Part shown: positions 25,210-50,705 of the stretch, piece after piece | How positions within the stretch are numbered: the stretch's first letter is position 1 | Layout: each line of letters begins with the position of its first letter | IMG/VR virus record: IMGVR_UViG_3300045974_000132 | Coordinates: 186,001-250,000 of that record | Reading direction: 5' to 3' (one strand) | DNA: 64,000 bases | Made by a program: the position numbers and the translations under genes | The notes under the pieces: model-generated | What the model saw: only the letters and a program-made list of their open reading frames with translations | Databases searched by the model: none | Told to the model about the DNA's origin: nothing

Positions 25210-25218
25210 GGATTAATT

Positions 25219-25908
25219 ATGTCAATAAAAAGCGACAAGTGGATTACAAGGATGTGTTCTCCGAACGGGGAAGAAGGAGAGCGCTACGGTAACGACGGTG
25301 AGATACTAGTACCGGGTAGGGAATCACGTTTACCAATGATCTGGCCGTTCGAGCCTAATCAAGTACGTTCGCGGGAAGCACCGGTAGTGTATAGCCCAGG
25401 GTCAAACTTGCATGACGATCTGTACCGAGGACCACGGCCTGTTATAAGCTACGGCTGTTCCTCTTACGGTTACGACATTCGCTGCGGCCGTGAGTTCAAG
25501 ATATTCACCAACATCAATTCATCAATCATTGATCCAAAGAACTTTGACCCAAAGTGTTTTGTAGATCACATTGGTGAATACTGCATAATCCCACCCAATT
25601 CGTTTGCACTAGCACGCACTGTTGAGTATCTTCGTATTCCTCGCGCTGTTCTGACTATTTGCTTAGGTAAGTCAACGTATGCGCGATGCGGTATCATTGT
25701 CAATGTAACGCCGTTTGAACCCGAGTGGGAGGGTTACGCTACACTGGAATTCTCGAATACAACACCCTTGCCTGCAAAGATTTATGCTAACGAAGGTTGT
25801 GCTCAGATCATGTTCTTCGAGAGCGATGAACAATGTGAAACATCTTATAAGGATCGCAATGGAAAGTATCAGTGTCAAGAAGCATTGCCCGTAACACCAA
25901 AGCTGTAA
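25219..25908 (+). CDS. dcd: dCTP deaminase (proteobacterial type, with insertions)
   Basis: [36 protein letters not shown]. Confidence 0.95.
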
Positions 25909-25972
25909 CACCTGAGTTACATAACACAATACAATAGAATCACTATAAACCCAAGCAATAAAGGTATAATCC

Positions 25973-33199: not shown

Positions 33200-33697
33200 T
33201 TGTTAAAGGTTATGCAAAAAAGACTATTAGCGCACCAGTTAGTAGAAGCCTCTAAAGTATTTGCTTACAAAGGTGAGCTATACTTTAAAAGGATTGCTCC
33301 TACTACAGCCGTTGCTCCTCTGTACAACACGGGTCATTACTTCGACCTATCATGTAACGGACTGAGCTTAAAATTCCACCCTATAAGCTTTACACTCCGC
33401 TCTGTACAGCCTATAATCTCTATCAGGGACTTACTTGATCGTGAGTGCTTGCTTGAACGTGCTTTCTTCACCTGCTATTACGATCCTTATTTGTTGATCG
33501 AGGACGTCAAGATCGTTACTAAGATTACCTTAGAAAGTGCAGGTATATCTTACTTATTAAACTGTAAAGTATATACACCGAAGTACGAAATGTTCTATGA
33601 CTACCTTTTGCCAGGTGCTCAAAGACGACATGTTACCGTAAGGGTGGAAAATGTTACAGTCGCACCTTCAATTATCATCAAAAATAAAGCTCCTTAG
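33200..33697 (+). CDS. hypothetical protein
   Basis: 165 aa ORF. Confidence 0.55.
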   Translation: MLKVMQKRLLAHQLVEASKVFAYKGELYFKRIAPTTAVAPLYNTGHYFDLSCNGLSLKFHPISFTLRSVQPIISIRDLLDRECLLERAFFTCYYDPYLLIEDVKIVTKITLESAGISYLLNCKVYTPKYEMFYDYLLPGAQRRHVTVRVENVTVAPSIIIKNKAP

Positions 33698-36481: not shown

Positions 36482-37387
36482 ATGAAACTTACACGACGCG
36501 GTTTTCTAAAGCTTTCTGGCAGCATGTTCTTGGCAGCAGTTCCTATACCTGCTTTCTGTGAGGTATCTTCTTCTGAGAATGTTATAACTCAGGCTTTGCT
36601 AAATCCTAGCATCCCTCTACCTATTACAGCACTGACTGACATAAACAATATCATCTGCTCCGTGCATGAAGCTTATGAATTCATTATCAATAAGTTTGAA
36701 GTTAATGATGCAAGAACGCAGTCTTACATGCGCGAGGGTGTATATCAAACTATGCAGGAGTTTCAGTCCCGGCGTCAGATATATGATTTCGCTGTTGTCT
36801 GTGATGATTCAAACAACCCTGTGTCTGTCATTGATTCTAATGATCTGATACTAGACGTTGCTATTAAGGTATTTCCTTTTGCAGATGCTCATTTGCGATT
36901 TTCAATGCAGGAAGACTTACGGGATGTGATTGATAAGTCTTTGCATATTTCAGATGTGATACTTGTCACCAATGATCTGAATCTGGATGTGCAAACGCTT
37001 GCTAAGAGTAAGCCTGCCTTATGCGTATATGCAGTAGCCCAATCTGCAACACCTTCAGACTTAGAGAATTTACACTCGGCTATATGCTCCACCTTTTTTG
37101 ACAATTATCGTTCACATAAAGAATACGGTGAAGATAATACATTGATGGGGCCGCGCAGAGGACTCCTTAGGTCTGAGCATATGTCTAAGGTGAATTGGAA
37201 TAGTACCTACTTGTCACACGCTCAACGCGATGCCGCTTATGCGCGAGGTATAAACTCTTTTACTAACTATCCGGGTATGGGTGTATGTGCCTGGAGTTCA
37301 TTTGCTTGGTTTAACGGTGTTCTGTATGATCGAACTACCATAACATCTTTTACTTCACGCGATATTTCTTTTGAGGAAGTTGTATGA
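36482..37387 (+). CDS. Tat-signal protein built from tail-sheath-like domains in permuted order
   Basis: TRRGFLK Tat motif; FEVND...IYDFAVVCDDSNN..VID; RRG...QRDAAY.RGIN...PGMG. Confidence 0.7.
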   Translation: MKLTRRGFLKLSGSMFLAAVPIPAFCEVSSSENVITQALLNPSIPLPITALTDINNIICSVHEAYEFIINKFEVNDARTQSYMREGVYQTMQEFQSRRQIYDFAVVCDDSNNPVSVIDSNDLILDVAIKVFPFADAHLRFSMQEDLRDVIDKSLHISDVILVTNDLNLDVQTLAKSKPALCVYAVAQSATPSDLENLHSAICSTFFDNYRSHKEYGEDNTLMGPRRGLLRSEHMSKVNWNSTYLSHAQRDAAYARGINSFTNYPGMGVCAWSSFAWFNGVLYDRTTITSFTSRDISFEEVV

Positions 37388-37611
37388 CTACGCCTACGCC
37401 TACACAACATGATCTGACACGCGAAGAAGCAATTGCATGGGCTATTGCAAACAACTGTAATTTCCAAGCACCTGTGTTTCCTCCGCCTCAGGGTTGGATG
37501 TGGGCTGATCGAGCAGTTGGTGGGGTGTATAGTATTATTCTTACTCCAGTGTTCACAAATACTGAAGACGCTGAAATAACTATCTCTGATTTAATTAAGG
37601 ATATAACATAA
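37384..37611 (+). CDS. hypothetical protein
   Basis: translationally coupled at both ends. Confidence 0.6.
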   Translation: MTTPTPTQHDLTREEAIAWAIANNCNFQAPVFPPPQGWMWADRAVGGVYSIILTPVFTNTEDAEITISDLIKDIT

Positions 37612-38606
37612 TGAAACAATACTTAGACCTTCTTCGTCGAATTCGTGATACAGGTACGCGTCAAGCTAATCGCACAGGCATTGATTCAATCTTTGTACCT
37701 GGCGCCATGATGCAGTTTGACCTACGCGAAGGCTTCCCAGCTGTCACAACAAAGAAGTTGTTCTTCAAGAAGACTATTGGTGAGAACATCGGCTTCTTGC
37801 AAGGTAAGGACAACGCTGCTGACTTTCGTGCATTAGGTTGTGACATTTGGGATGGCAATGCTAATCGTGACGGCGTTGATCTTGCAGGTAATGTAGTACC
37901 TAATCTGTGGCTGACAAACAAGAATCGCAAAGGTGAAGATGATCTTGGTCGCATCTATGGTGTGCAATGGCGTCACTGGCGTGGCAAGCCTATTCTGAAA
38001 GAATCTACTCCTGTATTTTCTGATGCAAAGAATATGCACTTCCTAGCTGAAATGGACTTCATTGAAGTCGATCAAGTTCAAAACATCCTGGCAAAACTCA
38101 AGACCAATCCTACAGATCGTCGCATGATTATCAATGCTTGGCGTCCTGATGAATTCGATCAGATGGCTTTGCCTCCGTGTCACATCATGTACCAGTTCAT
38201 TGCCAACGTTGAAAAGAATGAACTGCACCTGTGTATGTACCAGCGTAGCTGTGATATGTTCCTCGGTGTTCCGTTTAATATCGCAGGCTCTTCGATCTTG
38301 CTTACTGTGATTGCTGCTTTGACAGGCTTCCAACCTGCTACCTTCACTCACTTCTTAGCTGATGCTCATATCTATGTGAATCACCTTGAGCAGATTGAAC
38401 TGCAACTCAGTCGTGAACCTAAGCAAGCACCTGTTCTTGCTTACACAGGTCCAGGTAGCGAAGAGTGGAACTCTGAAAATGAAATTCCACTATATTCAAG
38501 TGACGGCATTATCTGTGCCTCAGTGTTTGATGAATTGAAGCCTGAACACTTCAACCTTCTTGACTACGATCCGCATCCTGCAATCAAAGCTGACATGGCT
38601 GTATAA
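37611..38606 (+). CDS. thyA: thymidylate synthase
   Basis: RTG, GFPAVTTKK, YGVQWR, ALPPCH, YQRSCD..LGVPFN, DAHIY. Confidence 0.97.
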   Translation: MKQYLDLLRRIRDTGTRQANRTGIDSIFVPGAMMQFDLREGFPAVTTKKLFFKKTIGENIGFLQGKDNAADFRALGCDIWDGNANRDGVDLAGNVVPNLWLTNKNRKGEDDLGRIYGVQWRHWRGKPILKESTPVFSDAKNMHFLAEMDFIEVDQVQNILAKLKTNPTDRRMIINAWRPDEFDQMALPPCHIMYQFIANVEKNELHLCMYQRSCDMFLGVPFNIAGSSILLTVIAALTGFQPATFTHFLADAHIYVNHLEQIELQLSREPKQAPVLAYTGPGSEEWNSENEIPLYSSDGIICASVFDELKPEHFNLLDYDPHPAIKADMAV

Positions 38607-38621
38607 CTAAGGAGAATCAAA

Positions 38622-39041
38622 ATGAATGAAACGAGACCTAAATCTAAAAAAGCTATGGCCCGTGCAGCAAGCGGTAGCACTATATCTGCTCCTAGCTTTG
38701 GTATGAAATCCCCAGGTACGTCTATTGGCGATAGCACACCTTCTATCTCTCAAGTTACCGGTGTATTTAGTACAGCAAATCCTGCTGAAGAATTAGCTAC
38801 ACCTACTTCTCAAGCCTTTGATGATCTTCGTACTATGCTTGATGCAACTGCTATGTATGTAAGTCAGCTTGAGCGTCGGTTGAAACCCGTATCTTCCCAA
38901 CGTGACTGCGGGGAAGGTAAGATGGAATCATATCCTTCTCGCGGGTCAAGTCCTATTGTTACACACATTGAATCTTTGGCCAACTATGTTCAAAATCTAA
39001 ACTGTCAACTTTCTTCCATCATTACTGATCTTGAAATCTAA
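38622..39041 (+). CDS. hypothetical protein
   Basis: AAGGAG RBS. Confidence 0.65.
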   Translation: MNETRPKSKKAMARAASGSTISAPSFGMKSPGTSIGDSTPSISQVTGVFSTANPAEELATPTSQAFDDLRTMLDATAMYVSQLERRLKPVSSQRDCGEGKMESYPSRGSSPIVTHIESLANYVQNLNCQLSSIITDLEI

Positions 39042-39046
39042 TCACC

Positions 39047-40012
39047 ATGACTAAATCTACACAAGCTTCATCCAATAAAATCACCATCAATCACATGTAC
39101 GACCTCTATGAGTTGTACGCGGTTATGTACTCACGCGACTATGCTTGGAAGGCAGCAGAAGCTCGGGGCCTAAGTTATGTTATGACCCAGGCTGCAATCC
39201 GTTCTAAGAAGCTCCTTGCTCAAGGCAAGAAAGCTTATGACTATGCTAAGAACGGTTTCAACGTGCTTGAAGTATTCAGCGGCAAGGGTGAGCATCTTCC
39301 TCACGTTAAGCTGCCTAAAGACCTTACACTGAAGTCTTACACCCATAATGATCTTCGTAATCATACAGGTGTTGCTACAAACTTTGTTCAAGGTGACGCA
39401 CTGACCACTAAGTTTGATGGTCACAACTTTGCTTGTGCTTTGTTCTATAGCATGAGCAGCCTTCATGATGAACACGGGTCCCACAATCGGAAGTATCTGA
39501 TCCAGCTGTTCAAGAACATGTATGACAGTCTGCCTGAAGGCGGCTGCTTCTTCGTAGACTTCTGCCCAGATGGTTATCGTCTAAGCTTGTCTGTTGAATC
39601 TACTGACAACGAAGACATGGCTGAAATCACCGTTGATCCTAATGCTGATCTTCGTGAACGTTTCAACATTCCTTTTGATGTTGAGTGTAAGCTCCGGTAC
39701 AAGAAGCATGTGTATTATGATCGTTCATTGGCTCAGTGCTTCGATCAATTCACTACACCCGTTTCAATCATGGTCGGTAACAAGACTGTTGCCAGTATTA
39801 CAATCGAAGAACCGATGACTCAGCGGTATTTCTCTGAAGCAGAGTTGGCCGATATTGCTCGGGAAGCTGGCTTCAAAGACTTCATGTTCTTCGACCTCAA
39901 CTACTCCAATAGTGATTTCAGTGTTGCTGAAAACATTGTTGAAAGCGATGAAGGTATTGAAACTGAAGAAGCGGACGGCTATATGGTTAACGGCATGATG
40001 GTGATAAAATAA
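39047..40012 (+). CDS. putative class I SAM-dependent methyltransferase
   Basis: VLEVFSGKG motif I, VQGD, LPEGGCFFVD. Confidence 0.65.
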   Translation: MTKSTQASSNKITINHMYDLYELYAVMYSRDYAWKAAEARGLSYVMTQAAIRSKKLLAQGKKAYDYAKNGFNVLEVFSGKGEHLPHVKLPKDLTLKSYTHNDLRNHTGVATNFVQGDALTTKFDGHNFACALFYSMSSLHDEHGSHNRKYLIQLFKNMYDSLPEGGCFFVDFCPDGYRLSLSVESTDNEDMAEITVDPNADLRERFNIPFDVECKLRYKKHVYYDRSLAQCFDQFTTPVSIMVGNKTVASITIEEPMTQRYFSEAELADIAREAGFKDFMFFDLNYSNSDFSVAENIVESDEGIETEEADGYMVNGMMVIK

Positions 40013-40638
40013 TGCTTACACCTGATCAAATTGAACATAACTGGAATGAGCTTCAACGTTACATTCCTGAGCATCTAAAACCTATCTTCTCTCGTTACAA
40101 TCACGATGTGCAAGTAGAGGATGTTCAAATACTAGGACTCATGTGTGCACCTGCTGGTAAGGGTGTGCATCATGCTTATCAAGGAGGCTTAGTTGAGCAT
40201 ATCCTTGAAATGGTCTACTATCTCAATTCTTTTGATAGTCTTCTTGACGAGAGTGATAATCGTGCTTCCTTGGATCACGCAGCTATGATTGAAGGCGCTC
40301 TGTTGCATGATATTCATAAAGGCTTCATGCACTTCTATGTACAGAAGGACGGTAGCTTTGATTACTACAAGGGTGCTTGGAACGCTTTCAACACACCTAA
40401 TCAAAAAACTATTGCTATGCTGATGGAGTGCGATGTTATTATCAGTCCGAAAGTATTGCACATCCTCAATTGTAGTGAAGGCGGCTGGGCTGAGAATGCT
40501 CCTCGCGAAGCAACGGTAGAAGCAAAGCTCGTTTATGTTGCAGATGAATTGAGCGTTGTCAATAGCCGTCTCAAGCAAGGTAACACTAAATCTATTCGTG
40601 ACCAAAAGCCTTCTTGGTTTGATCTATCCGCTTTTTAA
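40012..40638 (+). CDS. HD-domain phosphohydrolase (YhaM-like)
   Basis: APAG..HHAYQGGLVEH; LLHD; EA.LV..AD. Confidence 0.85.
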   Translation: MLTPDQIEHNWNELQRYIPEHLKPIFSRYNHDVQVEDVQILGLMCAPAGKGVHHAYQGGLVEHILEMVYYLNSFDSLLDESDNRASLDHAAMIEGALLHDIHKGFMHFYVQKDGSFDYYKGAWNAFNTPNQKTIAMLMECDVIISPKVLHILNCSEGGWAENAPREATVEAKLVYVADELSVVNSRLKQGNTKSIRDQKPSWFDLSAF

Positions 40639-40647
40639 AAGGTACTT

Positions 40648-41094
40648 ATGTCACAACATCCTCTTCCCATTACATCTAAAAAAGGTGTATCTACTCGCTG
40701 CTTTGTTGAATATGAAATCGACCTAGGTGGTAGTGAGCTTAAACTTCAAACACCTGTGCTGTTCAAGCGTATCCTGCGCGTGGGTACTAAGTTTATTGTC
40801 GTCGCTGAGATTCTCGGTAATCCTGTGGCGGAGTATTCTTTGCAAATTCTCCAAGTAGCTTCAATGAACTACATCCCACTAAGTGCGAAGTACATTGATT
40901 CTATAGTGCTTGCAGATAGTACCTTGGTGCATTTCTTTGCTCAACCTAAGGGCGCAAGTACCGATACTTCTGCACCAGTATCTGAACTAGCGGCTGCTCA
41001 AGTACGTCGTCCTACTAGCCCTCCTCGCGAAGAAGACCTAGTACGTCAAAGTAAGAGCAATCTTCGTGAACAAGTAAAGAACGACAAGGAATAA
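40648..41094 (+). CDS. hypothetical protein
   Basis: AAGG RBS. Confidence 0.6.
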   Translation: MSQHPLPITSKKGVSTRCFVEYEIDLGGSELKLQTPVLFKRILRVGTKFIVVAEILGNPVAEYSLQILQVASMNYIPLSAKYIDSIVLADSTLVHFFAQPKGASTDTSAPVSELAAAQVRRPTSPPREEDLVRQSKSNLREQVKNDKE

Positions 41095-41098
41095 TATC

Positions 41099-41800
41099 AT
41101 GCACGTAATCCCACTCGGTACCGGCGGCGCTTTTGATGAATACGAAACCTGTTACCTAGTTAATGATTCTGTTTTGATTGACTGCGGTCCGTCTTCAATC
41201 AAACGAGCATTCCGGTATGGGTGGGCTGAAGATATTACTCACGTGTTCCTTAGTCACATACATGCAGACCACATTGGTGGTTTTGAAGCCTTGTACTACT
41301 ATCGCAAGTATGTGACTAAGACACCTATCAAGGAAGTATATTGTCCGGGTGAATTCTATAAGCTTGCAAAGCAAATGCCTTTCTTACGTAACAATAAGGT
41401 CAACTTCCAGTTCAACTTCCTAGCAAGCTATTCCAGCAACTTCGTATTTATTGATACTGAGTTTGGTACTATAGGTGTACAACCGTTTCATGTGCTGCAC
41501 GGTGAACTAGAAGCTTACGGCTTTACTATCATTGACCAAGCAACTGGTAAAGTATTAATCATATCAGGTGATACAGACGGCCCTGTTAATGCTCGCCGCA
41601 GTAAATTTGATCTTATGTTTCATGACATAGGATGGGAAGGTCTACCCACTGAGTCTGATGACCATAAAGTTCATCCTCGTGAGTCCGAACTCGTAGAAGC
41701 TTTTGGGGAAGGGGCACCGATTGTTACAATTCACACCGCTGATCGTACTCCCCTTGGTGTATATCCCCGCGCTAAAATTGATAAGGTGTACAATGTCTGA
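41099..41800 (+). CDS. metallo-beta-lactamase fold hydrolase (RNase Z-like)
   Basis: LGTGGA, LIDCG, SHIHADH, SGDT. Confidence 0.85.
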   Translation: MHVIPLGTGGAFDEYETCYLVNDSVLIDCGPSSIKRAFRYGWAEDITHVFLSHIHADHIGGFEALYYYRKYVTKTPIKEVYCPGEFYKLAKQMPFLRNNKVNFQFNFLASYSSNFVFIDTEFGTIGVQPFHVLHGELEAYGFTIIDQATGKVLIISGDTDGPVNARRSKFDLMFHDIGWEGLPTESDDHKVHPRESELVEAFGEGAPIVTIHTADRTPLGVYPRAKIDKVYNV

Positions 41801-43175
41801 TAACAAACCGTTAGTTGTGTATCACAAAATCTCAGAGGCTCTCGATTGCTCTGATGGTTTTGCGTCTGCTTTTGTATTCTGGTTGCGCCACGGTGATAGC
41901 TATGACTACGTACCGGGTATGTACCATAAGAGGCTACCTCTTGAACTCTTTAAAGATCGTGAAGTTTATTTCGTAGACTTTGCCTATGATGATACCGAGT
42001 ACATGGATCAGATAAATTCAGTTTCTGAATCGTTATTAGTGCTAGACCACCATAGAACTTCGATGATCTCTTTAGGCACTAAGCCTTATGCTAGATTGGA
42101 CACTAAAAGTTGCGGCTGCAAGATGGCTTGGGATCTTTTATTTCCAACTCTTCCTTTTCCTTTGATGCTCGATCAGGTGTTTGATAAAGATGTCCAGTCT
42201 AAAAGACTTGCAGATAATGAGCCTTTTATGCAACGCTTACGTAGTATGCCCAATGACTTTAAAGTATGGCATAAGCTCCAGCTTACGTTAGATACTCGTG
42301 GCCCTGCATATGATAAGTTTGTTAAAGAAGGCGACCTCCTTCTCGCTGGGCATAATCAACATTGTGATATTATTGCAGCCAGTGCTTTTCCTATTGTCTT
42401 AGGTGGCATTGAAGGGCTTGCAGTAAATGCTAATAAGTTTTATGCCCATGACGTAGGTGAACTTCTTGCACTAAAGTCTAATACTTTTGGAGCCTCTTTC
42501 CATTTTCGTGAAGATAACTGTGTAGAATTCAGCCTTACAAGTGTAAATGACTTTGATGTAGAAAAGCTTGCCTTTAAGTATAAAGGAGGAGGCCATATTA
42601 ACGCATCCGGCTTCTATATTCCTATTACAAGCTTCTCCAGCATAGTCGACCTTTCAAGTAAGAATGTTTCCTTCTATCTTACTCTTCAAACGCACATTGA
42701 TGAATTCTGCACATCGTATTCTGCACCTTTATTCAGTGAGCAAGCTTCTCATAGGATTGTGCATGATCTAGCAGAATACCTATCTACTAAGTTGGGTAGT
42801 GTGGTAGATGAACTTCAGATTAAAGTCACTACAGTTCGTTCTGAGAATATTGCCCTTAATACTCGAATCCTTCTGTTCATTGCTAATACACTGAATCTAC
42901 CTATGAAGGACTCTAAGAAACGATGGTATCATCATATACTTCCTTACAAGATAAAATCAGTTCCTGTATATGACGACAGCCAGATTTCAGAACTGCTGGA
43001 GTTAGCCCGTTCTGATAATCAAGCGGATACTAACGATTTCATCGTTAACAACCTTCTTCAAACTGTAAAATATAGGTATGAAGCAACACTTATAGACCCT
43101 ACTGCTTATGAAGCATCTGTCAACGTTAGCTTCCCTAATAGCAATTTCTTCATCCAACATAAATTCTCTGTCTAA
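41793..43175 (+). CDS. DHH/DHHA1 phosphoesterase with an extra C-terminal domain
   Basis: DG, FVDF, LDHH, GGGH; about 170 aa C-terminal extension. Confidence 0.85.
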   Translation: MSDNKPLVVYHKISEALDCSDGFASAFVFWLRHGDSYDYVPGMYHKRLPLELFKDREVYFVDFAYDDTEYMDQINSVSESLLVLDHHRTSMISLGTKPYARLDTKSCGCKMAWDLLFPTLPFPLMLDQVFDKDVQSKRLADNEPFMQRLRSMPNDFKVWHKLQLTLDTRGPAYDKFVKEGDLLLAGHNQHCDIIAASAFPIVLGGIEGLAVNANKFYAHDVGELLALKSNTFGASFHFREDNCVEFSLTSVNDFDVEKLAFKYKGGGHINASGFYIPITSFSSIVDLSSKNVSFYLTLQTHIDEFCTSYSAPLFSEQASHRIVHDLAEYLSTKLGSVVDELQIKVTTVRSENIALNTRILLFIANTLNLPMKDSKKRWYHHILPYKIKSVPVYDDSQISELLELARSDNQADTNDFIVNNLLQTVKYRYEATLIDPTAYEASVNVSFPNSNFFIQHKFSV

Positions 43176-43187
43176 GGAATACACACC

Positions 43188-43886
43188 ATGATTTTCAATA
43201 CTCCCGCTCACCCTCTTAAACTTACCGGAACGGTATTCAAAGCTATTGATCCTTTAACCGGTGAGCGCGACTCTTATATCAGTTTGGCCATTCGTACTGC
43301 CTCTCCTTTGAATGATCGCCAGAATCTGCTTCATGCGGTACTGGGTATTGCTGATGAACTGGTTGAACTCGGTAGCTTAATCCGCTATGAGCAACCTGTT
43401 GAAGGTGCTGTATCGGCTTTTGAAAAGTTTAATCTAGCCCTGATTAAAGAGCTAGGCGACATTACTTGGTTTACGGCTCTGTTCGCTGATTGGGTTCAAA
43501 AGGTAAGCTTGGATGTTGATGCCAACACTCTATTTACTCAAATGGTTGAGACATCTACCAATAACTTCTTGGCTACTAAAGAAGTTAGTCAAGGTGATAC
43601 CTCTGATGATCTTATCAGCGACATCTATCAAGAAGGTGTGTACGGTACTGTTGGTCGGTGTATTTCTTTGACTAAGAAGGAATACGCTTACGGTAAGCCG
43701 ATGTCCTTAGATGCTGCTCAACGCTTGTTTGAGGAAGCTCTTACTATCGTTATGACCGTTACTGGTGAAAAGAATATTCCTTTTCTTGATGTGCTGGATC
43801 GCAACATTGAAAAGCTTTCTGCTCGTTACAAGAAAGCAACCTTCACGCAAGAAGAAGCTATCAATCGTGATGAAACGAAGGAGTAA
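43188..43886 (+). CDS. MazG-like nucleotide pyrophosphohydrolase
   Basis: GIADELVE, ELGDITWF, NIEKLSARY. Confidence 0.8.
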   Translation: MIFNTPAHPLKLTGTVFKAIDPLTGERDSYISLAIRTASPLNDRQNLLHAVLGIADELVELGSLIRYEQPVEGAVSAFEKFNLALIKELGDITWFTALFADWVQKVSLDVDANTLFTQMVETSTNNFLATKEVSQGDTSDDLISDIYQEGVYGTVGRCISLTKKEYAYGKPMSLDAAQRLFEEALTIVMTVTGEKNIPFLDVLDRNIEKLSARYKKATFTQEEAINRDETKE

Positions 43887-43888
43887 TC

Positions 43889-44290
43889 ATGGCACCTGAT
43901 ACTCCACCCTCTGCACAAGCTGTCCTAAACGGCTTTGAAGAACTGTATGTAGCCAGTACCTATTATGCAAATCTGCGTAAAGCTTTGTATGAAATAGAAG
44001 CTACCACTTTTACAATGATGGATATTTCTGTACAGGATAACATCATTGCTTCGATCCAAACAAGCTTGCTTCATTTCTTTCTGGAAGTTGGTGGGTTGTT
44101 AGAAGATAATTATTCTTTTGATCCCTTTATCAACATCAACTTCCACAGTGACTTGTGTACGGCTCACTACATACCTTTTGCTATCACTATGCTGTTTGAC
44201 AAGAAGGGTGACGAAAAAGACTTAGGGCTTCTTTCAGTTCTATTCAGTCTCACAATCCTTGAAGGTCGTATTGTTCTGCGATGCGAATAA
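43889..44290 (+). CDS. hypothetical protein
   Basis: AAGGAG RBS. Confidence 0.6.
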   Translation: MAPDTPPSAQAVLNGFEELYVASTYYANLRKALYEIEATTFTMMDISVQDNIIASIQTSLLHFFLEVGGLLEDNYSFDPFININFHSDLCTAHYIPFAITMLFDKKGDEKDLGLLSVLFSLTILEGRIVLRCE

Positions 44291-44622
44291 CCACTTTCCA
44301 GTGGCAACAACGAGTCTTCACCGCTAAGTCATACAAGATCAAGAAGGAAATGGTCGAGTGTGTAGCTTCAGATGGTGAAGCTCGTTCTTTCCCACTTAAA
44401 GACCTTATCTGGGTGAATGAACTAAAACGTGGTAAGCATATTCGTTTTCGAGTCTGCTATCGTGTTAAGCAGGAAGTTAGTGGTGTTCAGATAAAGAGCA
44501 TTAAAAACTCTCCAGCTGTTCCCGGATTCTCAACTGCTATTCTTCCTGACGGTAGTACTCTACTTGTTAATAGGAAGTTGAATACTTTATATCGTAAGGA
44601 CCCTCCTGATGCAAGTCGGTGA
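44281..44622 (+). CDS. hypothetical protein
   Basis: overlapping, packed ORF. Confidence 0.55.
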   Translation: MRITTFQWQQRVFTAKSYKIKKEMVECVASDGEARSFPLKDLIWVNELKRGKHIRFRVCYRVKQEVSGVQIKSIKNSPAVPGFSTAILPDGSTLLVNRKLNTLYRKDPPDASR

Positions 44623-45562
44623 ATACATAATCCTAGCAATCACGCCTATCAAGAATGTTTTAGGGCGCGTAGTCAAGATGGATAAAGAACGAAAGAAGTA
44701 TCAAGCTGTTCTTGAAAAAGATAGCGTCGATGGTCAAAATGTTCCGTTTGACTTTAAGCTTGCTGAGGTAGTTGCTTACTTAGGTAGATCACCTAAAGCA
44801 GGTAGTGCGTACGGTGTTCAAGTAGAGCCTCTTCGTGAGCGTATCGACCATTCGTATTGGGGCGAGATTCGTATCTTTGCTGAGATTGATGACAACCAGC
44901 GTAAAGCAATACGCCTTGCTCTGAAACTCACCAAAGAGAAGCTTGCAAAGATGCGTATGCCTCAGCTTCCTTTGACTGTTGAGATTCGTGAGCAAAAAGG
45001 TAAGCTGCGCGGTTTTTACAAGCACAAGCCTAAAGCAGAGTTTGATACCCTGTGCGCAAAAATCGACGAAGGTGTTTCAGAAATGGACTATATCGTGTCG
45101 CACGAATACGCGCATGGTATTTGGTTCCGTCACATGACACCTAAGCAGCGCATGTCATGGGTACGTCTATACCATGATGCGATCACGTTGAATGATGTTG
45201 CACCGAAAGAACTCAAAGCAATTCTTGAAGACCTCAAGAGTAACGGTGATCTTCGTTCGTATGCTAAGGAAGTTGAGGAAGAAACATTGTTAATCCTCAA
45301 AGCTGTCTTCCGTCATATCAGTCAGGTTCACTCTATTACTCGCCAGCACTTTGAAATGGCTTTGATGCTAGGTGACGATGTATCTGTCTACTGGCCGAAG
45401 AGTGTAGAGCTTAGTGAGAAGAATGTACTCCTAACGGAATACTCAAAACGCTCGCCTGAGGAATTATGGGCAGAAGCCTTTGCTTTGCATTTTACAGGCA
45501 AAAAATTACCTAGTAAGATACATGATCTTCTTGATCGGCACATGCGTACCTTAGTTAAGTGA
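44609..45562 (+). CDS. putative zincin metallopeptidase
   Basis: HEYAH plus downstream EY...PEELWAEAF. Confidence 0.65.
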   Translation: MQVGEYIILAITPIKNVLGRVVKMDKERKKYQAVLEKDSVDGQNVPFDFKLAEVVAYLGRSPKAGSAYGVQVEPLRERIDHSYWGEIRIFAEIDDNQRKAIRLALKLTKEKLAKMRMPQLPLTVEIREQKGKLRGFYKHKPKAEFDTLCAKIDEGVSEMDYIVSHEYAHGIWFRHMTPKQRMSWVRLYHDAITLNDVAPKELKAILEDLKSNGDLRSYAKEVEEETLLILKAVFRHISQVHSITRQHFEMALMLGDDVSVYWPKSVELSEKNVLLTEYSKRSPEELWAEAFALHFTGKKLPSKIHDLLDRHMRTLVK

Positions 45563-45569
45563 GGCTTAT

Positions 45570-45887
45570 ATGGGTGCAGTTACTGGTTTAGATTATACAC
45601 CTGTTACACGATATGAAAATACTCATACGAATGATGAACTTATAAGCCTAGCCCTTAACTCTCCTAGCGATCTTGTTAAAGAGCTTGGGCTACGTTTGCA
45701 TCTTGCACTATTAGGTGAGTACGATGATGAAGGCAATCCTAAGTCTGACGGAGAGGAAAAAGAATTCTCCGTTACTAAGGTTAAGGGTAATGTGATTACA
45801 TGTCAAGACGCAGCAACATTTCAAGTTACCTGCCCGGGTTGCTATCATCCTTTTAAACTTATTCAATCGTTAAATGAAAGAACATAA
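45570..45887 (+). CDS. hypothetical protein
   Basis: GAGG RBS; CPGC. Confidence 0.6.
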   Translation: MGAVTGLDYTPVTRYENTHTNDELISLALNSPSDLVKELGLRLHLALLGEYDDEGNPKSDGEEKEFSVTKVKGNVITCQDAATFQVTCPGCYHPFKLIQSLNERT

Positions 45888-46354
45888 TGAGTTTAGACTT
45901 TAAGGAAGTTCTTGATCTTCGCATAGCTGTGCAAGAAAAGATTAAGAATGATCCAGAGGTATCTTCGGAAGCTTTAATTCGGGACGCTATTATCTGTAGT
46001 AATACGGCTCTTGCAGGCAGTACGCCTAGATCCTGTTTGATTGAAGCGATTGCTTTACTAACAGTGGCTGTAGACCTTAATGATTATGAAAGGCATACTC
46101 CTCACCATAAGATTAAAGCTTTACTAGTCAATGGTACTAAGCACGGTGAGATTGTTGAAGTCTCCCCTGAAATAAGTATGCACCTTGCTGATGATAGTAA
46201 AGAAATCTATACTCGACATAGCCATACTGAAAAGGATGGTCACTACTATCTAGTACTGGTGTTGGAACTGTCTTTAGTCTCTGTGCATCTGATAAGTATA
46301 GAAGAAAACATTGCACATGCTAAATCTAAAATGAAGTTAGGAGTATCTGCATGA
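45887..46354 (+). CDS. hypothetical protein
   Basis: coupled. Confidence 0.6.
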   Translation: MSLDFKEVLDLRIAVQEKIKNDPEVSSEALIRDAIICSNTALAGSTPRSCLIEAIALLTVAVDLNDYERHTPHHKIKALLVNGTKHGEIVEVSPEISMHLADDSKEIYTRHSHTEKDGHYYLVLVLELSLVSVHLISIEENIAHAKSKMKLGVSA

Positions 46355-47106
46355 AACTACTATTAGTCGGTGGGTCTTGTCATGGCTCCACCCATGATGT
46401 TGCATCCCCTTATTCTGCTTTTTATGCACTTAAGGGCTGTGCTTACAAAGTTACTCCTGAAACGATCACTGTAGAAGAACGTAAGCAGAAAGTAACCGTT
46501 GCTATCTATGAAGGTTGCAGCGACCTTGAAACTTGGGAATTATCTGAGCGCATACTAAATGCTATTCACCTGTATGCTGCTAAGGCTGTAGAACAGATAG
46601 GTGAGGAAGGCGTACAAAGTGTTAAGTGTGTACCCGGTCTTTCTGGACCCAATATTCCAAATATCGTCGGTGAAGCTGCTGACAAGGTACCCGGTGCAGA
46701 CAAACGTACTGTTGCTGGCGTAGTAGGCCGCTTGCTAGAAGAAGCTGTTGAACTAGCTCTTGAAGCAGGACTTCCTACAGGTGAGATATATGCACATGTT
46801 ACAGACAGTATCTATAATCAGTATGTCAAAGCTTCAAAAGTAACAGGTAGTATCATCTACCCTTCTACTAAGCTTGACGATGATCCTTGGGCGTTCCGAG
46901 CAGAAGTCGCGGGTGAAATAGGTGACGTTGCTGTGATGCTTATGGATGTAGCACACCGTGCCGGAATTGACTATGAAGCAGCACGCCAAGCAAAGATACA
47001 GTCCTTCATTACTAAGGTAGACGAGGGCAAGTTCTATGCCAATGATAAAGGCTTGCTGTACGTTCGTAAACCGCACATGGATTTTAAGAACAATGGAACT
47101 GAATAG
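46351..47106 (+). CDS. protein with a C-terminal MazG-like (all-alpha NTP-PPase) domain
   Basis: RLLEEAVELA...GEIGDV. Confidence 0.6.
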   Translation: MKLLLVGGSCHGSTHDVASPYSAFYALKGCAYKVTPETITVEERKQKVTVAIYEGCSDLETWELSERILNAIHLYAAKAVEQIGEEGVQSVKCVPGLSGPNIPNIVGEAADKVPGADKRTVAGVVGRLLEEAVELALEAGLPTGEIYAHVTDSIYNQYVKASKVTGSIIYPSTKLDDDPWAFRAEVAGEIGDVAVMLMDVAHRAGIDYEAARQAKIQSFITKVDEGKFYANDKGLLYVRKPHMDFKNNGTE

Positions 47107-47302
47107 CAACCTACAAGAAATTGTTGAACACCATGTTCACGTAGATAGAGAAGGTGTCATTCATAAGTGCTACCACCAATGTCGCAGACTAATGACTGAC
47201 CCTTCTTTTTGGGTAGGCTTAACTATAGGTTTTCCTTTTGAACATCTGCTTTGGGAAAAGGTATGGCCCTTTAAACTGCTTACTGCTTTAATGGGCCTAT
47301 AA
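47093..47302 (+). CDS. small membrane-type hypothetical protein (probable start MELN)
   Basis: hydrophobic C-terminal half. Confidence 0.5.
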   Translation: MELNSNLQEIVEHHVHVDREGVIHKCYHQCRRLMTDPSFWVGLTIGFPFEHLLWEKVWPFKLLTALMGL

Positions 47303-47313
47303 GTGTAAAAGAC

Positions 47314-47814
47314 ATGAATAAAGAATCTCAGAAGGTGAATGTGCAAGAGTTAATGAAGCAGGTAGATGCTTCTATTGCAGCCTCTAAAGTATTTGACTAT
47401 AAAGGCTTAGCTGATGGTGTTACAAAGGCTACTTTCAATTTTTTTGCCGACTTAAGGGATCGAGGTGTTATCACCTCTTTTGCCGTTTCTGATGCAAAAG
47501 TAGTACGTCACACTTGGACAACATTGTATCCTAATTTGCTAAAGCGCCTTCTAGCTTGGATTGCTTATGACTTAGGCTTAGGCGATGAAACAACACCTAG
47601 GTGGTATCATCGTGTTCTACCTTACACTGTTATTAAAGCTATCGTAGTAAATCAAGAATACTTCGATACTGATACACCTAAAGAAGAAGTGTATTGGTAT
47701 ATTAATGAAATATATGAGGCTACGATTAAGTATCCTCATGAAACAATCTGTCAAGACATAGCGGTAGCTCCTGTAACTCCTATAGAGCGTATCTGCATAA
47801 CACTTAAAGCTTAG
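47314..47814 (+). CDS. protein resembling the tail-sheath C-terminal domain with an RWYHxxLPY insertion
   Basis: FFADLRDRGVITSFAV and DIAVAPVTPIERICITL ends. Confidence 0.55.
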   Translation: MNKESQKVNVQELMKQVDASIAASKVFDYKGLADGVTKATFNFFADLRDRGVITSFAVSDAKVVRHTWTTLYPNLLKRLLAWIAYDLGLGDETTPRWYHRVLPYTVIKAIVVNQEYFDTDTPKEEVYWYINEIYEATIKYPHETICQDIAVAPVTPIERICITLKA

Positions 47815-47825
47815 GGCATAACATA

Positions 47826-48941
47826 ATGGAATCCACTTCACTAGCAGTCAAGTATCGTCCTAAGACTCTAAATGGGCTGATAGGACAAGACCATATTATC
47901 TCTGCTGTTACAGGCATGCTGAAGACTAAGAAAATGCCTTCTGCTATCATGTTGTATGGTCCAACAGGTTTGGGTAAGACAACTACTGCCCGCATCATTG
48001 TTCGCTACTTGAACTGTGCAAACCCAAATCCTGAAACATATGCTCCTTGCGGCGAATGTCAAAGCTGCAAGATGAAAGAACACCCAGACGTTATGGAACT
48101 CAACGCTGCTGACTCTCGCGGTATTGATGACGTTCGTAATCTTATCAACTTGGCTAAGAACATGCCTACGTTTGGTAAGAAACGTTTTATGATTATCGAC
48201 GAAGCACAGCAGCTTCCTACTTTGTCACAACAAGCTTTGCTGAAACCTATCGAGGAGCCACCTAAAGATACAATCTGGATCATTTGTACGATGACTCCAG
48301 AGAAGATGCTTCCTGCTATTGCAAAGCGTTGTACTAGATTGCAAGTTAAGCCTGTTGAGGCGCAAGTATTGGTGAAGCGCCTTTGGCAAATCGGCAAGCG
48401 TGAAGGTGTAGATTTTAAAACAATTGAAAACGGTACTAAGGTACTTAAAACAATTGCTGATTTCTCTAACGGTGGGGTACGTGATGCTATCTCTGCTTTA
48501 GAACCTATTATCTATGCTGTACAGAGCGGAGAAAATGTAGATCCTAATACCGTATTATCTAACTTCCTCGCAAGCCCTGAAGCGGAACTAGATAAGCAAG
48601 CTGTGAATGTCCTTATCGCTGTATTCAAGAATGATCTGAAACTTTTGTTAGAACAAACGCAGGTGTCAGATAATATTCGAGGCATTCTTAATAAGCTTCG
48701 CTGGTTGATCGACTACCTTCTGTCTAACAGTATAGGTAAAGCAAAGTTCATTCCTTATAGCGGGCGTCTATTTGCTAAAGAGTCTAAAGCTTACAGTATA
48801 AAGGTAACACTTGCTACCCTTATCAGCCTTCAGAGTCTTCTGGTAGATATTGAAGTTCGCTTAAATAGCTTCAGCCTTGAGGAGCGCGTTGTCTTTACTG
48901 CGATGGTAGGAGAACTCATTAATAACAGGGCTTCAAAATGA
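47826..48941 (+). CDS. dnaX: clamp loader subunit, DNA Pol III gamma/tau-like
   Basis: LAVKYRP, GPTGLGKTT, CGECQSC, IIDEA, LLKPIEEPP, RC. Confidence 0.9.
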   Translation: MESTSLAVKYRPKTLNGLIGQDHIISAVTGMLKTKKMPSAIMLYGPTGLGKTTTARIIVRYLNCANPNPETYAPCGECQSCKMKEHPDVMELNAADSRGIDDVRNLINLAKNMPTFGKKRFMIIDEAQQLPTLSQQALLKPIEEPPKDTIWIICTMTPEKMLPAIAKRCTRLQVKPVEAQVLVKRLWQIGKREGVDFKTIENGTKVLKTIADFSNGGVRDAISALEPIIYAVQSGENVDPNTVLSNFLASPEAELDKQAVNVLIAVFKNDLKLLLEQTQVSDNIRGILNKLRWLIDYLLSNSIGKAKFIPYSGRLFAKESKAYSIKVTLATLISLQSLLVDIEVRLNSFSLEERVVFTAMVGELINNRASK

Positions 48942-49156
48942 AGTATGTCTTAATCCTATTTATCTTTCTGGCCGGATGCGCTAATGAAGACTGGCAAGAA
49001 ACACGTAAAAATAATCTTGATAAGGTGAAAGCGTCGTGTGCTAGTTCTGGTGGACAACTAACTATCACTTATGAAGTATCGACCTTTACTTCATCTATTC
49101 GTGTTACCTGTTCCTATCCTTCACAGCTTGACCCTAACTTGGACTTACAACAATGA
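48938..49156 (+). CDS. small lipoprotein
   Basis: lipobox LAGC. Confidence 0.7.
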   Translation: MKYVLILFIFLAGCANEDWQETRKNNLDKVKASCASSGGQLTITYEVSTFTSSIRVTCSYPSQLDPNLDLQQ

Positions 49157-49635
49157 AACATCTTACACAAACTCAACTGGTCAATCGAATCTCTGCTCTA
49201 ATCAAAGGTCAGCTTGCTTCAGATTGTGTTAATGCACTACTGATGAATGCTACCAGTATCTTTGAGAACTGTGGTCACAACCTGCTCAAGATTTCTATTG
49301 CTGGCACTATGACGACCCTAACAGGCCGTTTGACTCAGCACCTTGTAACTGAAAAAGCTTTTTCTCTCAATGCTGAACTGCAACAATTGCTGGAAGACAT
49401 TGTAGAGAATGGGCCGATCAATACTGTTGGCCATCCTGTCGATTCTGACAACTTGGTGAAAGCAGGTTTGCTTGTGCGTATCGTTAATCAAGGTATGCCG
49501 ACATTCATTGCTGCTACGCCTAATGGTCTTGCTCTATACCTTAGTTGGTATAGTGTATCTACTATTGAAGAAGCTAAGGCTAAGAAAGCAGCGCCTACAG
49601 AAAATCCGCTTCAGCCTAGCTTGGTTGAGAGTTAA
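49153..49635 (+). CDS. hypothetical protein
   Basis: coupled. Confidence 0.6.
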   Translation: MKHLTQTQLVNRISALIKGQLASDCVNALLMNATSIFENCGHNLLKISIAGTMTTLTGRLTQHLVTEKAFSLNAELQQLLEDIVENGPINTVGHPVDSDNLVKAGLLVRIVNQGMPTFIAATPNGLALYLSWYSVSTIEEAKAKKAAPTENPLQPSLVES

Positions 49636-49637
49636 AC

Positions 49638-50060
49638 ATGTTTTCAGAACAGTTCCTTAAAGAACTTAGGCATGCTATAGCCAGTGTAAGAACTTCTAGG
49701 TTTTCTGTTCCTATTAGTGTCCAACTACTCGCAAACATGCGAAGGTCTATCACTGATAAAAATATACCTGTTACGCATATCGTATGCGGTTCAGATGTAT
49801 GGCCTATACTGTCTTCAGATGACACACTGCGTGCCCTGATTATACCTACTGAAAACATAGAGCAGGTTAATATAGGCTTCGTTGCAACAGTCTTTGCGCT
49901 ACCCATAATCTGCGAAGGTGCGCTACCTAAGCTTAAACGATTTTTAAAGCCGAATACTCTTGCTGTTGCAGCCCTGGATACTACACATAAGAATACTTGG
50001 CATACTAAATTTCCAGAGCTTAGTGTCTTAGATGCAGTAGCCTCTTCTATCAGCCGTTAA
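49638..50060 (+). CDS. hypothetical protein, paralogue of 50112-50705; possible major-capsid A-domain-like fragment
   Basis: shared PIS..L..NMR.SI...THI..G.D...G...T..L.......KR.L pattern. Confidence 0.6.
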   Translation: MFSEQFLKELRHAIASVRTSRFSVPISVQLLANMRRSITDKNIPVTHIVCGSDVWPILSSDDTLRALIIPTENIEQVNIGFVATVFALPIICEGALPKLKRFLKPNTLAVAALDTTHKNTWHTKFPELSVLDAVASSISR

Positions 50061-50111
50061 TTAAAAACTTCTGTTTAATGTTCTTCAATCAACTGAGTTT
50101 AAGGATGTATA

Positions 50112-50705
50112 ATGAATAAACAAGCATTGGAAACCTTAGAAGCACTGCATAAAGATATGGGTAAACAGATAGAAACTTTGCTGCAGGATATTAAGCGTTC
50201 TGTTCCTCTTTCACCCGAACTAAAAGAGTTCCTTACTGAGTGGGCCGCTGGTCGTACACCTGTAGCCCCGATTGATGACCAGCCCCCTACTTACTCAAAA
50301 GAATTTCTTTTGCAAGTTCGTGAGTTGGCTTTGCATGAGTCTTCAGAGGTGCGCTTTATTACACCTATTAGTGCGGGTCTTATTTCCAACATGCGTAGCT
50401 CCATCAGCAAGGGTTGCTCTTTCACACCTACGCACATACTAGCAGGCAATGACTTTTTTAAGTTGATGTTTTCAGAATACACTTTAAGCAAACTGTTCGA
50501 TCCGATTACTCGTTATACCGATGTTATATCTGGTTACTTGGGTACTCTGATTGGTCTAGATGTTCTCATTGACTCTTACGACTCTCCGGAGAAACGAATT
50601 CTTCCCAATGGGTTTTTAGCAGTTGTTTCTATAGAAACTTATAAGAACGATGACGGTTCTATCTACCTTAAAATGCACCGCTGCGTTAATGCGTTAATCT
50701 CATAA
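50112..50705 (+). CDS. hypothetical protein, paralogue of 49638-50060; possible major-capsid A-domain-like fragment
   Basis: LFDPITR..VISGYLGTLIGLDVLIDSY...KRIL. Confidence 0.6.
   Translation: MNKQALETLEALHKDMGKQIETLLQDIKRSVPLSPELKEFLTEWAAGRTPVAPIDDQPPTYSKEFLLQVRELALHESSEVRFITPISAGLISNMRSSISKGCSFTPTHILAGNDFFKLMFSEYTLSKLFDPITRYTDVISGYLGTLIGLDVLIDSYDSPEKRILPNGFLAVVSIETYKNDDGSIYLKMHRCVNALIS

What the first reader, a model, noticed from the sequence alone, without database searches (positions are those of the whole stretch)
36482..50705. Possible system of virion-protein decoys in the replication/metabolism region
Four or five ORFs (36482, the 41793 C-terminus, 47314, 49638, 50112) appear to be truncated or rearranged sheath and capsid domains located away from morphogenesis genes. 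Known: several bacterial defences are triggered by virion proteins (CapRel and Lit by capsid, DSR2 by tail tube, Avs by portal or terminase). Inference: non-polymerising fragments made before late genes could occupy such sensors, or poison assembly of competing phages.
Basis: inference. Interest (0 to 1): 0.7.

Follow-up and report, generated by a model that had tools for sequence, protein, structure and literature searches.

The report
Capsid- and sheath-derived mini-proteins among replication genes
A 286-kb pond phage carries, among its DNA-replication genes, small well-conserved proteins cut out of its own capsid and tail-sheath proteins. The capsid-derived ones belong to a widespread, undescribed family, but nothing yet shows that they are immune decoys.

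Summary
The observation largely holds. The window is part of a 286,393-bp jumbo phage from a pond metagenome, related to Lu11 and PaBG. ORFs 49638 and 50112, plus a third copy outside the window, match residues 226-313 of the phage's own major capsid protein. ORF 36482 carries tail-sheath C-terminal segments in permuted order behind a Tat-type export signal. ORF 47314 and the C-terminal extension of the DHH enzyme 41793 are related to each other. Their sheath origin is only weakly hinted.

The capsid-derived proteins are not debris. An exhaustive search found 78 family members of 200 aa or less, and 77 start with M. They score above full-length capsid proteins and fit a single clade. AlphaFold gives pLDDT 97.6 and the C-terminal half of the HK97 fold. 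Close relatives keep the gene between clamp loader and SbcC, with dN/dS of 0.05-0.09.

The decoy idea is untested: no RNA run was found and the complex prediction gave no answer. A periplasmic 36482 fits a cytoplasmic decoy poorly. The closest known kind is the "A-domain encapsulins", which suggests an enzyme-partner role as an alternative. I rate this a new variant of a known kind, of moderate to high interest.

The parts
36482..37387 (+). 301-aa protein. Residues 1-26 form a Tat-type signal (TRRGFLK, hydrophobic stretch, AFC). Residues ~40-150 resemble the sheath C-terminal domain (Phage_sheath_1C). Residues ~154-290 resemble the sheath segment that normally precedes it.
   Evidence: (T4 gp18 571-626 aligns to residues 70-125). 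The ESM model of residues 29-148 matches a sheath C-terminal cluster at TM 0.78. Residues 154-273 are homologous to a 166-aa protein of a distant phage contig, L008 (E 2e-10). No orthologue sits in the same slot of relative L013.
41793..43175 (+). DHH/DHHA1 phosphoesterase (residues 1-286) with a ~170-aa C-terminal extension (about 42660-43175) of the 47314 family.
   Evidence: phrog_4771 at 7e-50. The long form (458-460 aa) is kept in relatives at 54-56% identity, whereas the PaBG DHH is only 283 aa. The extension aligns with 47314 over its whole length. A sheath or capsid origin is not shown.
47314..47814 (+). 166-aa stand-alone homologue of the DHH C-terminal extension. A sheath-like N-terminus is suspected only.
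   Evidence: No PHROG or Pfam hit. hhalign to the sheath profile gives E 0.1. AF2 pLDDT is 41.5. Its L012 homologue gives weak sheath PHROG hits.
48938..49156 (+). 72-aa lipoprotein (lipobox LAGC), first gene of the conserved cassette between clamp loader and SbcC.
   Evidence: The lipobox is kept in the orthologues of L006, L010, L012 and L026.
49153..49635 (+). 160-aa protein of unknown function. It is conserved directly upstream of the mini-capsid gene, 2 nt upstream here and overlapping it in relatives.
   Evidence: 44-50% identity to orthologues. No family hit.
49638..50060 (+). 140-aa mini-capsid protein, equivalent to the C-terminal half of the HK97 fold. It is the syntenic orthologue group kept in relatives.
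   Evidence: AF2 pLDDT 97.6 and pTM 0.90. The top 50 PDB matches are all HK97-fold shell proteins. VIA Z reaches 8.9, and HK97 gp5 aligns at 215-383. dN/dS of its orthologues is 0.05-0.09.
50112..50705 (+). 197-aa second mini-capsid paralogue with an extra ~60-aa N-terminal extension that looks helical by eye. This copy is absent from the same slot in relatives.
   Evidence: matches MCP 226-313 at E 9e-13. Relatives L010, L012, L026 and L028 have a single copy between clamp loader and SbcC.

Best explanation
**What it is (well supported).** The region holds members of small accessory-protein families that arose by cutting and rearranging the phage's own virion genes.
- The best defined is a 'mini-capsid' family of about 116-197 aa, with three copies in this genome. 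It keeps only the C-terminal half of the HK97 fold: the A domain plus flanking strands. It lacks the N-arm, E-loop and spine helix that knit capsomers into a shell.
- Its orthologues are under purifying selection and keep a fixed place between clamp loader and SbcC in related phages.
- Sheath-derived pieces (36482, a 76-aa ORF, and small proteins in Lu11, HRDY3 and PaBG) keep the conserved 'VVCDxSNN' part of the sheath C-terminal domain.

**How it most likely works (inferred).** They act as non-polymerising mimics that bind whatever the parent domain binds. The mini-capsid proteins would bind other HK97 A domains or proteins that dock on them. They are made from replication-gene operons rather than with the virion genes.

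The Tat-exported 36482 would act in the periplasm. One possibility is that it acts on incoming tails of related phages, like a superinfection-exclusion factor.

Whether the target is the phage's own assembly, a competitor or a host sensor is not resolved.
For: **Homology**
-.

**A real family**
- The exhaustive profile search gave 187 hits.
- Among the 150 best, 78 are 200 aa or less. Of these, 77 start with M, and the median length is 139 aa.
- The top 15 hits are all short proteins (116-197 aa); the first full-length capsid protein ranks 16th.

**Single origin not rejected**
- The labels need 2 changes on the tree, against 28 when shuffled. The tree with the family held together has the higher likelihood (p-AU 0.80).

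**Independent fold**
- AF2 pLDDT 97.6.
- HK97-fold matches only.

**Constraint**
- dN/dS is 0.05-0.09 at dS 0.25-0.29. The same pairs give 0.01-0.05 for clamp loader and SbcC.
- Codon adaptation of the fragment ORFs is 0.66-0.76. Genes average 0.70±0.04 and off-frame sequence 0.59±0.04.

**Synteny**
- The order clamp loader, lipoprotein, ~150-aa protein, mini-capsid, SbcC is found in L006, L010-L013 and L026-L029.

**Recurrence of both kinds together**
- L008 has a 111-aa VVCD-motif ORF, a 166-aa sheath-like ORF and a 168-aa mini-capsid within 5.3 kb.
- Lu11 has gp106 (capsid-like, 287 aa) and gp115 (sheath motif) in its replication region.

**Export signal**
-.
Against: - No binding partner has been shown, and the capsid plus mini-capsid co-fold gave no verdict.
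- No expression data exist.
- Mini-capsid orthologues diverge faster than their neighbours over long distances (30-46% identity against 69-76%). At short range they show no positive selection. Neither an arms race nor a housekeeping role is singled out.
- PaBG, HRDY3, JA11 and NCTB lack a mini-capsid gene, so it is dispensable for this phage group.
- The sheath origin of 47314 and the DHH extension is unproven.
- 36482 has no orthologue in the nearest relative.
Confidence: 0.45

Rival explanations
1. Enzyme-partner or scaffold role, as proposed for Family 4 'A-domain encapsulins'. The mini-capsid protein would oligomerise through its A domain and stabilise or organise a replication or nucleotide-metabolism enzyme encoded beside it. 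The 47314-type domain fused to the DHH phosphoesterase would be a similar accessory module.
For: - A-domain-only HK97 proteins exist in cells. They sit downstream of enzymes in two-gene operons, and one forms a stable complex with GAPDH (PMC8346489, read).
- PDB 2PK8 matches the model at Z 6.4 over 84 of its 94 residues.
- The mini-capsid genes always sit inside enzyme operons: clamp loader and SbcC here, dCTP deaminase in L008, and near an exonuclease for copy 3.
- The 47314-type domain is physically fused to an enzyme, and the fusion is conserved.
- Low dN/dS fits a housekeeping partner.
Against: - None of 36 members hits PF08967, so the resemblance is at fold level only.
- The neighbouring genes differ between the three paralogues and between phages, so no single partner enzyme is evident.
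- Related isolates replicate without the gene.
Confidence: 0.25
2. Early-made, non-polymerising fragments would occupy host defence sensors that recognise capsid or tail proteins (CapRel, Lit, DSR2 or Avs-like), or would poison the assembly of competing phages.
For: - The fragments are true structural homologues encoded in replication operons.
- The neighbourhood has an anti-defence flavour: an MBL hydrolase with a sub-threshold Apyc1 hit, plus HD, DHH and MazG.
- Three diverged paralogues (31-36% identity) and fast long-range divergence would suit varied targets.
- Satellites do use capsid-protein homologues (Ccm) to redirect capsid assembly (PMC8569155, abstract listed).
Against: - No sensor, timing or binding data exist.
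- 36482 is probably exported.
- A faithful mimic should trigger rather than block sensors that fire on binding (my own reasoning).
- No positive selection is seen at short range.
- To my knowledge, the regions of capsid proteins reported to be sensed by Lit and CapRel are not the A domain. I did not check this here.
Confidence: 0.15
3. They are minor virion or assembly components, such as capsomer plugs, vertex or decoration proteins, or sheath initiators or terminators. They would merely be encoded outside the main morphogenesis block, as is common in jumbo phages.
For: - In PaBG, the relative studied, virion proteins are encoded at scattered loci and some virion proteins have no known function (PMC7412058).
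- The A domain and the sheath C-terminal domain are exactly the parts that contact like subunits.
Against: - The genes sit in tight operons with clamp loader, SbcC, ThyA and DHH.
- The Lu11-type promoter core is absent from the + strand of window 33-62 kb. This is weak evidence, because in Lu11 that same promoter type sits upstream of the clamp loader.
- Four related isolates lack the mini-capsid gene.
- A Tat signal on 36482 is incompatible with incorporation into virions assembled in the cytoplasm.
Confidence: 0.1
4. Non-functional debris of duplications or recombination that merely remains open by chance.
For: - Jumbo phages accumulate paralogues.
- 36482 and the extra copy 50112 have no orthologue in the nearest relatives.
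- JA11 carries a sheath-motif remnant with two stops.
Against: - dN/dS is 0.05-0.09.
- There are 78 family members of 200 aa or less, and 77 start with M.
- The AF2 fold has pLDDT 97.6, driven by covariation in 36 sequences.
- Synteny is conserved.
- Codon usage is gene-like.
Confidence: 0.05

Closest known systems
Family 4 'A-domain encapsulins' (Pfam PF08967/DUF1884; PDB 2PK8, Pyrococcus furiosus PF0899; Andreas & Giessen 2021, PMC8346489)
   Same: Both are stand-alone, heavily truncated HK97-fold proteins that keep the A domain. Both are encoded inside operons with enzymes rather than with virion genes, and neither has a known function. 2PK8 aligns to the model at Z 6.4 over 84 of 94 residues.
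   Different: - No sequence-family match: 0 of 36 members hit PF08967.
- The phage proteins are longer (116-197 aa against about 100) and align to HK97 gp5 215-383, so they probably include strands beyond the A domain.
- They are clearly derived from a phage capsid lineage (phrog_2522; 18 of 36 members hit it).
- They come from phage or metagenome contigs, not from hyperthermophilic archaea or Bacteroidetes.
- They occur as up to three diverged copies per genome.
Satellite capsid-protein homologue Ccm of SaPIbov5 (PMC8569155)
   Same: It is a homologue of a phage major capsid protein encoded outside the phage's morphogenesis module, and it acts by mixing with the real capsid protein. This is the nearest precedent for 'poisoning or redirecting assembly'.
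   Different: Ccm is described there as a homologue of the helper capsid protein that redirects capsid shape; to my knowledge it is near full length and built into the shell (not checked here). The mini-capsid proteins lack half the fold, and they are encoded by the phage itself.
Two-component tail sheath of the Lu11/PaBG ('Lupandier') jumbo phages (PMC7412058; Kurochkina et al. 2018 as cited there)
   Same: This genome also has two full-length sheath paralogues, of 529 and 564 aa. Sheath gene duplication is therefore a hallmark of the group and the likely raw material for the fragments.
   Different: Those paralogues are full length and are virion components. 36482, the 76-aa ORF, Lu11 gp115, HRDY3 XDJ15183 and PaBG gp195 keep only pieces of the C-terminal domain, and they lie in replication regions.
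Lu11 gp106 (RefSeq 'major head protein', 287 aa, NC_017972.1 77477-78340)
   Same: It is a truncated capsid paralogue in the replication region of a cultured relative. Its C-terminal part matches the mini-capsid profile (hhalign probability 97%).
   Different: It is about twice as long, with two matches to the same part of the profile. It belongs to the class of about 21 hits of 201-320 aa, not to the ~140-aa class.

Membership tests
HK97-fold major capsid protein (phrog_2522 lineage) | Sequence homology to the family | tested here: met
   49638 and 50112 match the phage's own MCP at E 4e-8 and 9e-13. 18 of 36 family members hit phrog_2522, the best at 4e-7.
HK97-fold major capsid protein (phrog_2522 lineage) | Complete fold: N-arm, E-loop, P domain with spine helix, and A domain | tested here: not met
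   Only MCP residues ~200-330 are represented. The model aligns to HK97 gp5 215-383. These proteins are derived from a capsid protein but are not capsid proteins.
Family 4 A-domain encapsulins (PF08967) | Match to Pfam PF08967/DUF1884 | tested here: not met
   No PF08967 hit at E <= 0.1 in any of 36 members.
Family 4 A-domain encapsulins (PF08967) | Truncated HK97 fold that retains the A domain | tested here: met
   AF2 pLDDT 97.6. 2pk8 matches at Z 6.4 with 84 aligned residues, and all other top matches are HK97-fold shells.
Family 4 A-domain encapsulins (PF08967) | Two-gene operon directly downstream of a partner enzyme | tested here: inconclusive
   The gene always lies inside enzyme operons. 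The gene immediately upstream is an unknown protein of ~150-204 aa (49153 here, 204 aa before copy 3) or an 80-aa ORF in L008, and it differs between copies.
Contractile tail sheath (PF04984 + PF17482) | Phage_sheath_1C domain above the gathering score | tested here: met
   36482 scores 27.5 bits against a cut-off of 26.9. It hits phrog_23 at 7e-13 and T4 gp18 at 1e-5.
Contractile tail sheath (PF04984 + PF17482) | Full-length collinear architecture (N-terminal domain, PF04984, then PF17482) | tested here: not met
   36482 is 301 aa, has no PF04984 hit, and carries its segments in reversed order. The true sheaths are at genome 90771-92360 and 24580-26274.
Contractile tail sheath (PF04984 + PF17482) | Sheath homology of 47314 and the 41793 C-terminus | tested here: inconclusive
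   hhalign is non-significant. Weak PHROG hits occur for one homologue only. The AF2 model is unusable.
Tat-exported protein | N-terminal [ST]RRxFLK, a hydrophobic stretch, and small residues before the cleavage site | tested here: met
   36482 has TRRGFLK at residues 4-10, a hydrophobic window up to residue ~26, then AFC. The only other RRxFLK in 1701 ORFs is also N-terminal, at genome 21088. Export itself is not testable here.
Anti-defence decoy of a structural-protein sensor | Made before late genes, and binds or blocks a defence sensor | not testable with these tools
   Only DNA metagenome runs hold the sequence, and no host or sensor is known. The co-fold with the capsid protein gave no answer.

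The most novel reading that the evidence does not exclude
Jumbo phages of this lineage maintain a toolkit of 'self-mimic' proteins: A-domain-only capsid copies and sheath C-terminal pieces, one of them exported by Tat. These would be made from replication operons. They would act in conflicts, either by blocking capsid- or tail-sensing host immunity or by excluding or sabotaging related superinfecting phages. That would make structural-protein mimicry a general counter-defence or inter-phage weapon class.
Probability: 0.2. Interest if true: 0.85.

Novelty: new variant of a known kind. Interest (0 to 1): 0.62.

Why it matters
If the mini-capsid family acts on capsid assembly or on sensors of capsid proteins, it would be a phage-encoded class of structural mimics. 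That class would bear directly on how defences triggered by virion proteins are evaded, and on how phages compete.

Even if the role is mundane, the finding still has value.
- It defines an undescribed protein family: no Pfam or PHROG model of its own, 78 representatives of 200 aa or less, and a confident fold.
- It shows a second, independent case of the HK97 A domain surviving as a stand-alone protein.
- It gives cultured entry points for experiments: Lu11 gp106 and gp115, and HRDY3 XDJ15183.

Tried and rejected
- **Close relatives in public collections.** Megablast of the region against phage records found nothing. Word-based searches with 50112, 36482 and the 47314-family alignment found only the query itself. 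IMG/VR scans with the mini-capsid alignment and the clamp loader found nothing, and broader alignments were too diverse for that tool.
- **Population variation.** Laying contigs of three pond-metagenome runs gave identical sequence, so no variation in this phage itself. I used relatives' contigs for dN/dS instead.
- **PaBG proteins in the same slots.** These are unrelated to 47314 or the DHH extension.
- **Structure of 47314.** The ESM Atlas gave nothing convincing and the AF2 model was poor. A PDB sequence search with its homologue found nothing.
- **Timing from promoters.** The σ70 and terminator scans were not above the shuffled expectation. The Lu11 'middle/late' promoter core is conserved in this genome but absent from the + strand of window 33-62 kb. 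In Lu11 it precedes the clamp loader, so it does not settle timing.
- **L008 contig.** I could not search the rest of it for its capsid gene, because the record is not held.
- **Debris hypothesis.** Considered and rejected for the syntenic mini-capsid lineage.
- **Literature.** A search for capsid-derived decoys found no precedent.

Full report
**Context**

The window is bases 186001-250000 of a single 286,393-bp contig. Only pond-metagenome DNA runs hold it, one of them probably its source. Its major capsid protein (MCP; genome 95806-96903, 365 aa, phrog_2522) is 54-58% identical to those of Pseudomonas jumbo phages HRDY3, Lu11 and PaBG. The clamp loader is only 37-40% identical. This is therefore a distant member or sister of the 'Lupandier' group. 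Like that group (PMC7412058), it has two full-length tail sheaths, of 529 aa at genome 90771-92360 and 564 aa at 24580-26274.

- An intragenomic phmmer search and an all-against-all comparison show only 18 paralogue families among 444 genes.
- Capsid family: the MCP, window 49638 (140 aa), window 50112 (197 aa) and genome 265549-266007 (152 aa). The three short proteins align to MCP residues ~200-330. They keep its most invariant residues, P270 and G280, and two of the three also keep D293.
- Sheath family: the two sheaths, window 36482 (301 aa) and a 76-aa ORF at genome 18789-19019.
- 36482 passes the Pfam gathering score for Phage_sheath_1C. Its segments are in reversed order relative to three different sheaths.
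- Its C-terminal half matches a 166-aa protein in a distant phage contig, L008. A separate 111-aa L008 ORF carries the 'VVCD' motif. 36482 therefore looks like a fusion of two fragment genes. This last step is my inference.
- 47314 and the C-terminal ~170 aa of the DHH phosphoesterase 41793 are homologous to each other. The extended DHH is conserved in relatives, whereas the PaBG DHH is short. A virion-protein origin for this third family is only hinted at and fails profile and structure tests.
- All fragments, including the two outside the window, lie among DNA-metabolism genes.

**The mini-capsid proteins are a real family**

- An exhaustive profile search of 1.8 billion representatives gave 187 hits.
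- Among the best 150, 78 are 200 aa or less. Of these, 77 start with M, and the median length is 139 aa. About 21 are 201-320 aa and 51 are full-length MCPs.
- The top 15 hits are all short proteins; the first full-length MCP ranks 16th.
- No Pfam or PHROG family covers them, apart from weak hits to the MCP PHROG.
- On a tree of the shared region, the short proteins and the MCPs separate almost cleanly: 2 label changes against 28 when shuffled. The constrained one-clade tree has the higher likelihood, with p-AU 0.80. This is consistent with one old truncation followed by diversification.
- With 36 sequences, AlphaFold gives pLDDT 97.6 and pTM 0.90.
- All 50 best Foldseek PDB matches are HK97-fold capsid or encapsulin proteins. 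The re-alignment gives Z up to 8.9 and maps the model onto HK97 gp5 215-383.
- The protein is thus the C-terminal half of the fold. It lacks the N-arm, E-loop and spine helix.

**Conservation and selection**

- Contigs from other metagenomes (L006, L010-L013, L026-L029) keep one gene order. It runs clamp loader, 68-75-aa lipoprotein, ~150-aa protein, mini-capsid, SbcC.
- PaBG has clamp loader directly followed by SbcC.
- Across these relatives the mini-capsid orthologue is 30-46% identical, where clamp loader and SbcC are 69-76%.
- Among close relatives, dN/dS is 0.05-0.09 at dS 0.25-0.29. The clamp loader gives 0.01-0.03 in the same pairs.
- Codon adaptation of all the fragment ORFs is gene-like.
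- The 50112 copy and 36482 have no counterpart in the same slots of the nearest relatives.

**Recurrence elsewhere**

- L008, a distant phage contig, has both sheath-derived ORFs and a mini-capsid gene within 5.3 kb, among PNK, dCTP deaminase and topoisomerase genes.
- Profile searches of five cultured relatives show no mini-capsid gene in PaBG, HRDY3, JA11 or NCTB.
- Lu11 has gp106, a 287-aa capsid paralogue in its replication region.
- Small proteins carrying the sheath motif occur in Lu11 (gp115), HRDY3 (XDJ15183) and PaBG (gp195). A remnant with stops occurs in JA11.

**Mechanism**

Nothing here measures function. The co-fold of MCP with the mini-capsid protein gave 'no answer', and I do not count it either way. 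Timing cannot be read: there are no RNA runs, and the promoter scans were uninformative.

Two observations constrain the options.
- 36482 starts with TRRGFLK followed by a hydrophobic stretch. The only other RRxFLK in the genome is also at an N-terminus. 36482 is therefore probably exported folded to the periplasm, which does not suit a decoy for cytoplasmic sensors. After sheath contraction, the tube of an incoming phage is exposed there. An exclusion role is conceivable, but that is inference.
- A-domain-only HK97 proteins are already known in archaea and Bacteroidetes ('Family 4 A-domain encapsulins'). They sit in enzyme operons, and one is reported in complex with GAPDH (PMC8346489). PDB 2PK8 matches our model at Z 6.4. 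An enzyme-partner role is therefore a serious rival.

I commit, with modest confidence, to non-polymerising mimicry of the parent domain's contacts as the common logic. I put the specific immune-decoy version at about 0.15.

**Verdict**

The mini-capsid family is new as a family, and a new variant of the known 'truncated HK97' kind.

Noticed in passing
genome 21088-21633 (outside the window; L002:6088-6633, + strand): A second ORF (181 aa) begins with a Tat-type signal, SRRGFLKL...PAFA. It has no PHROG hit and lies between the 76-aa sheath-motif ORF and the second sheath gene.
   Followed up: partly
window 48938-49156 (+): A 72-aa lipoprotein whose lipobox (LAGC) and two further cysteines are conserved in all orthologues. 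It is the first gene of the conserved cassette between clamp loader and SbcC. By analogy with other small phage lipoproteins, it might be a superinfection-exclusion or spanin-like protein.
   Followed up: partly
window 40012-43886 (+): A run of nucleotide-acting hydrolases: HD (40012), an MBL hydrolase (41099) with a sub-threshold Apyc1 hit (22.9 against a cut-off of 50, although its orthologues are flagged PF23023), the extended DHH (41793) and MazG (43188). They may degrade signalling nucleotides.
   Followed up: partly
window 15209 (-), 32314 (-); genome 89302, 172163, 184841, 252248, 279428, 283644: The core of the promoter annotated as 'middle/late' in Lu11, ACTGTAAATA, occurs 10 times in this genome. 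Eight of these are intergenic and 22-80 nt upstream of a gene on the same strand.
   Followed up: partly
window 33389-33417 (+): A near-consensus σ70-type promoter (TTTACA, 17 nt, TATAAT; 11 of 12) near the start of the long + strand gene block that contains all the fragment genes. It lies inside the longest reading of ORF 33200-33697.
   Followed up: no
L025:7478-8341 (Lu11 NC_017972.1 77477-78340): Lu11 gp106 is labelled 'major head protein' in RefSeq. It is a 287-aa truncated paralogue in the replication region, next to a gene labelled 'head-tail connector'. The true MCP is gp065.
   Followed up: partly
L002:4481-6075 (genome 19481-21075): GTP cyclohydrolase and QueD-like genes, which suggest 7-deazaguanine DNA modification, lie just downstream of the 76-aa sheath-motif ORF.
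   Followed up: no
JA11 NC_048077.1 12332-12469: A sheath C-terminal motif match interrupted by one TGA and one TAG. It is apparently a decayed copy of the small sheath-motif gene.
   Followed up: no
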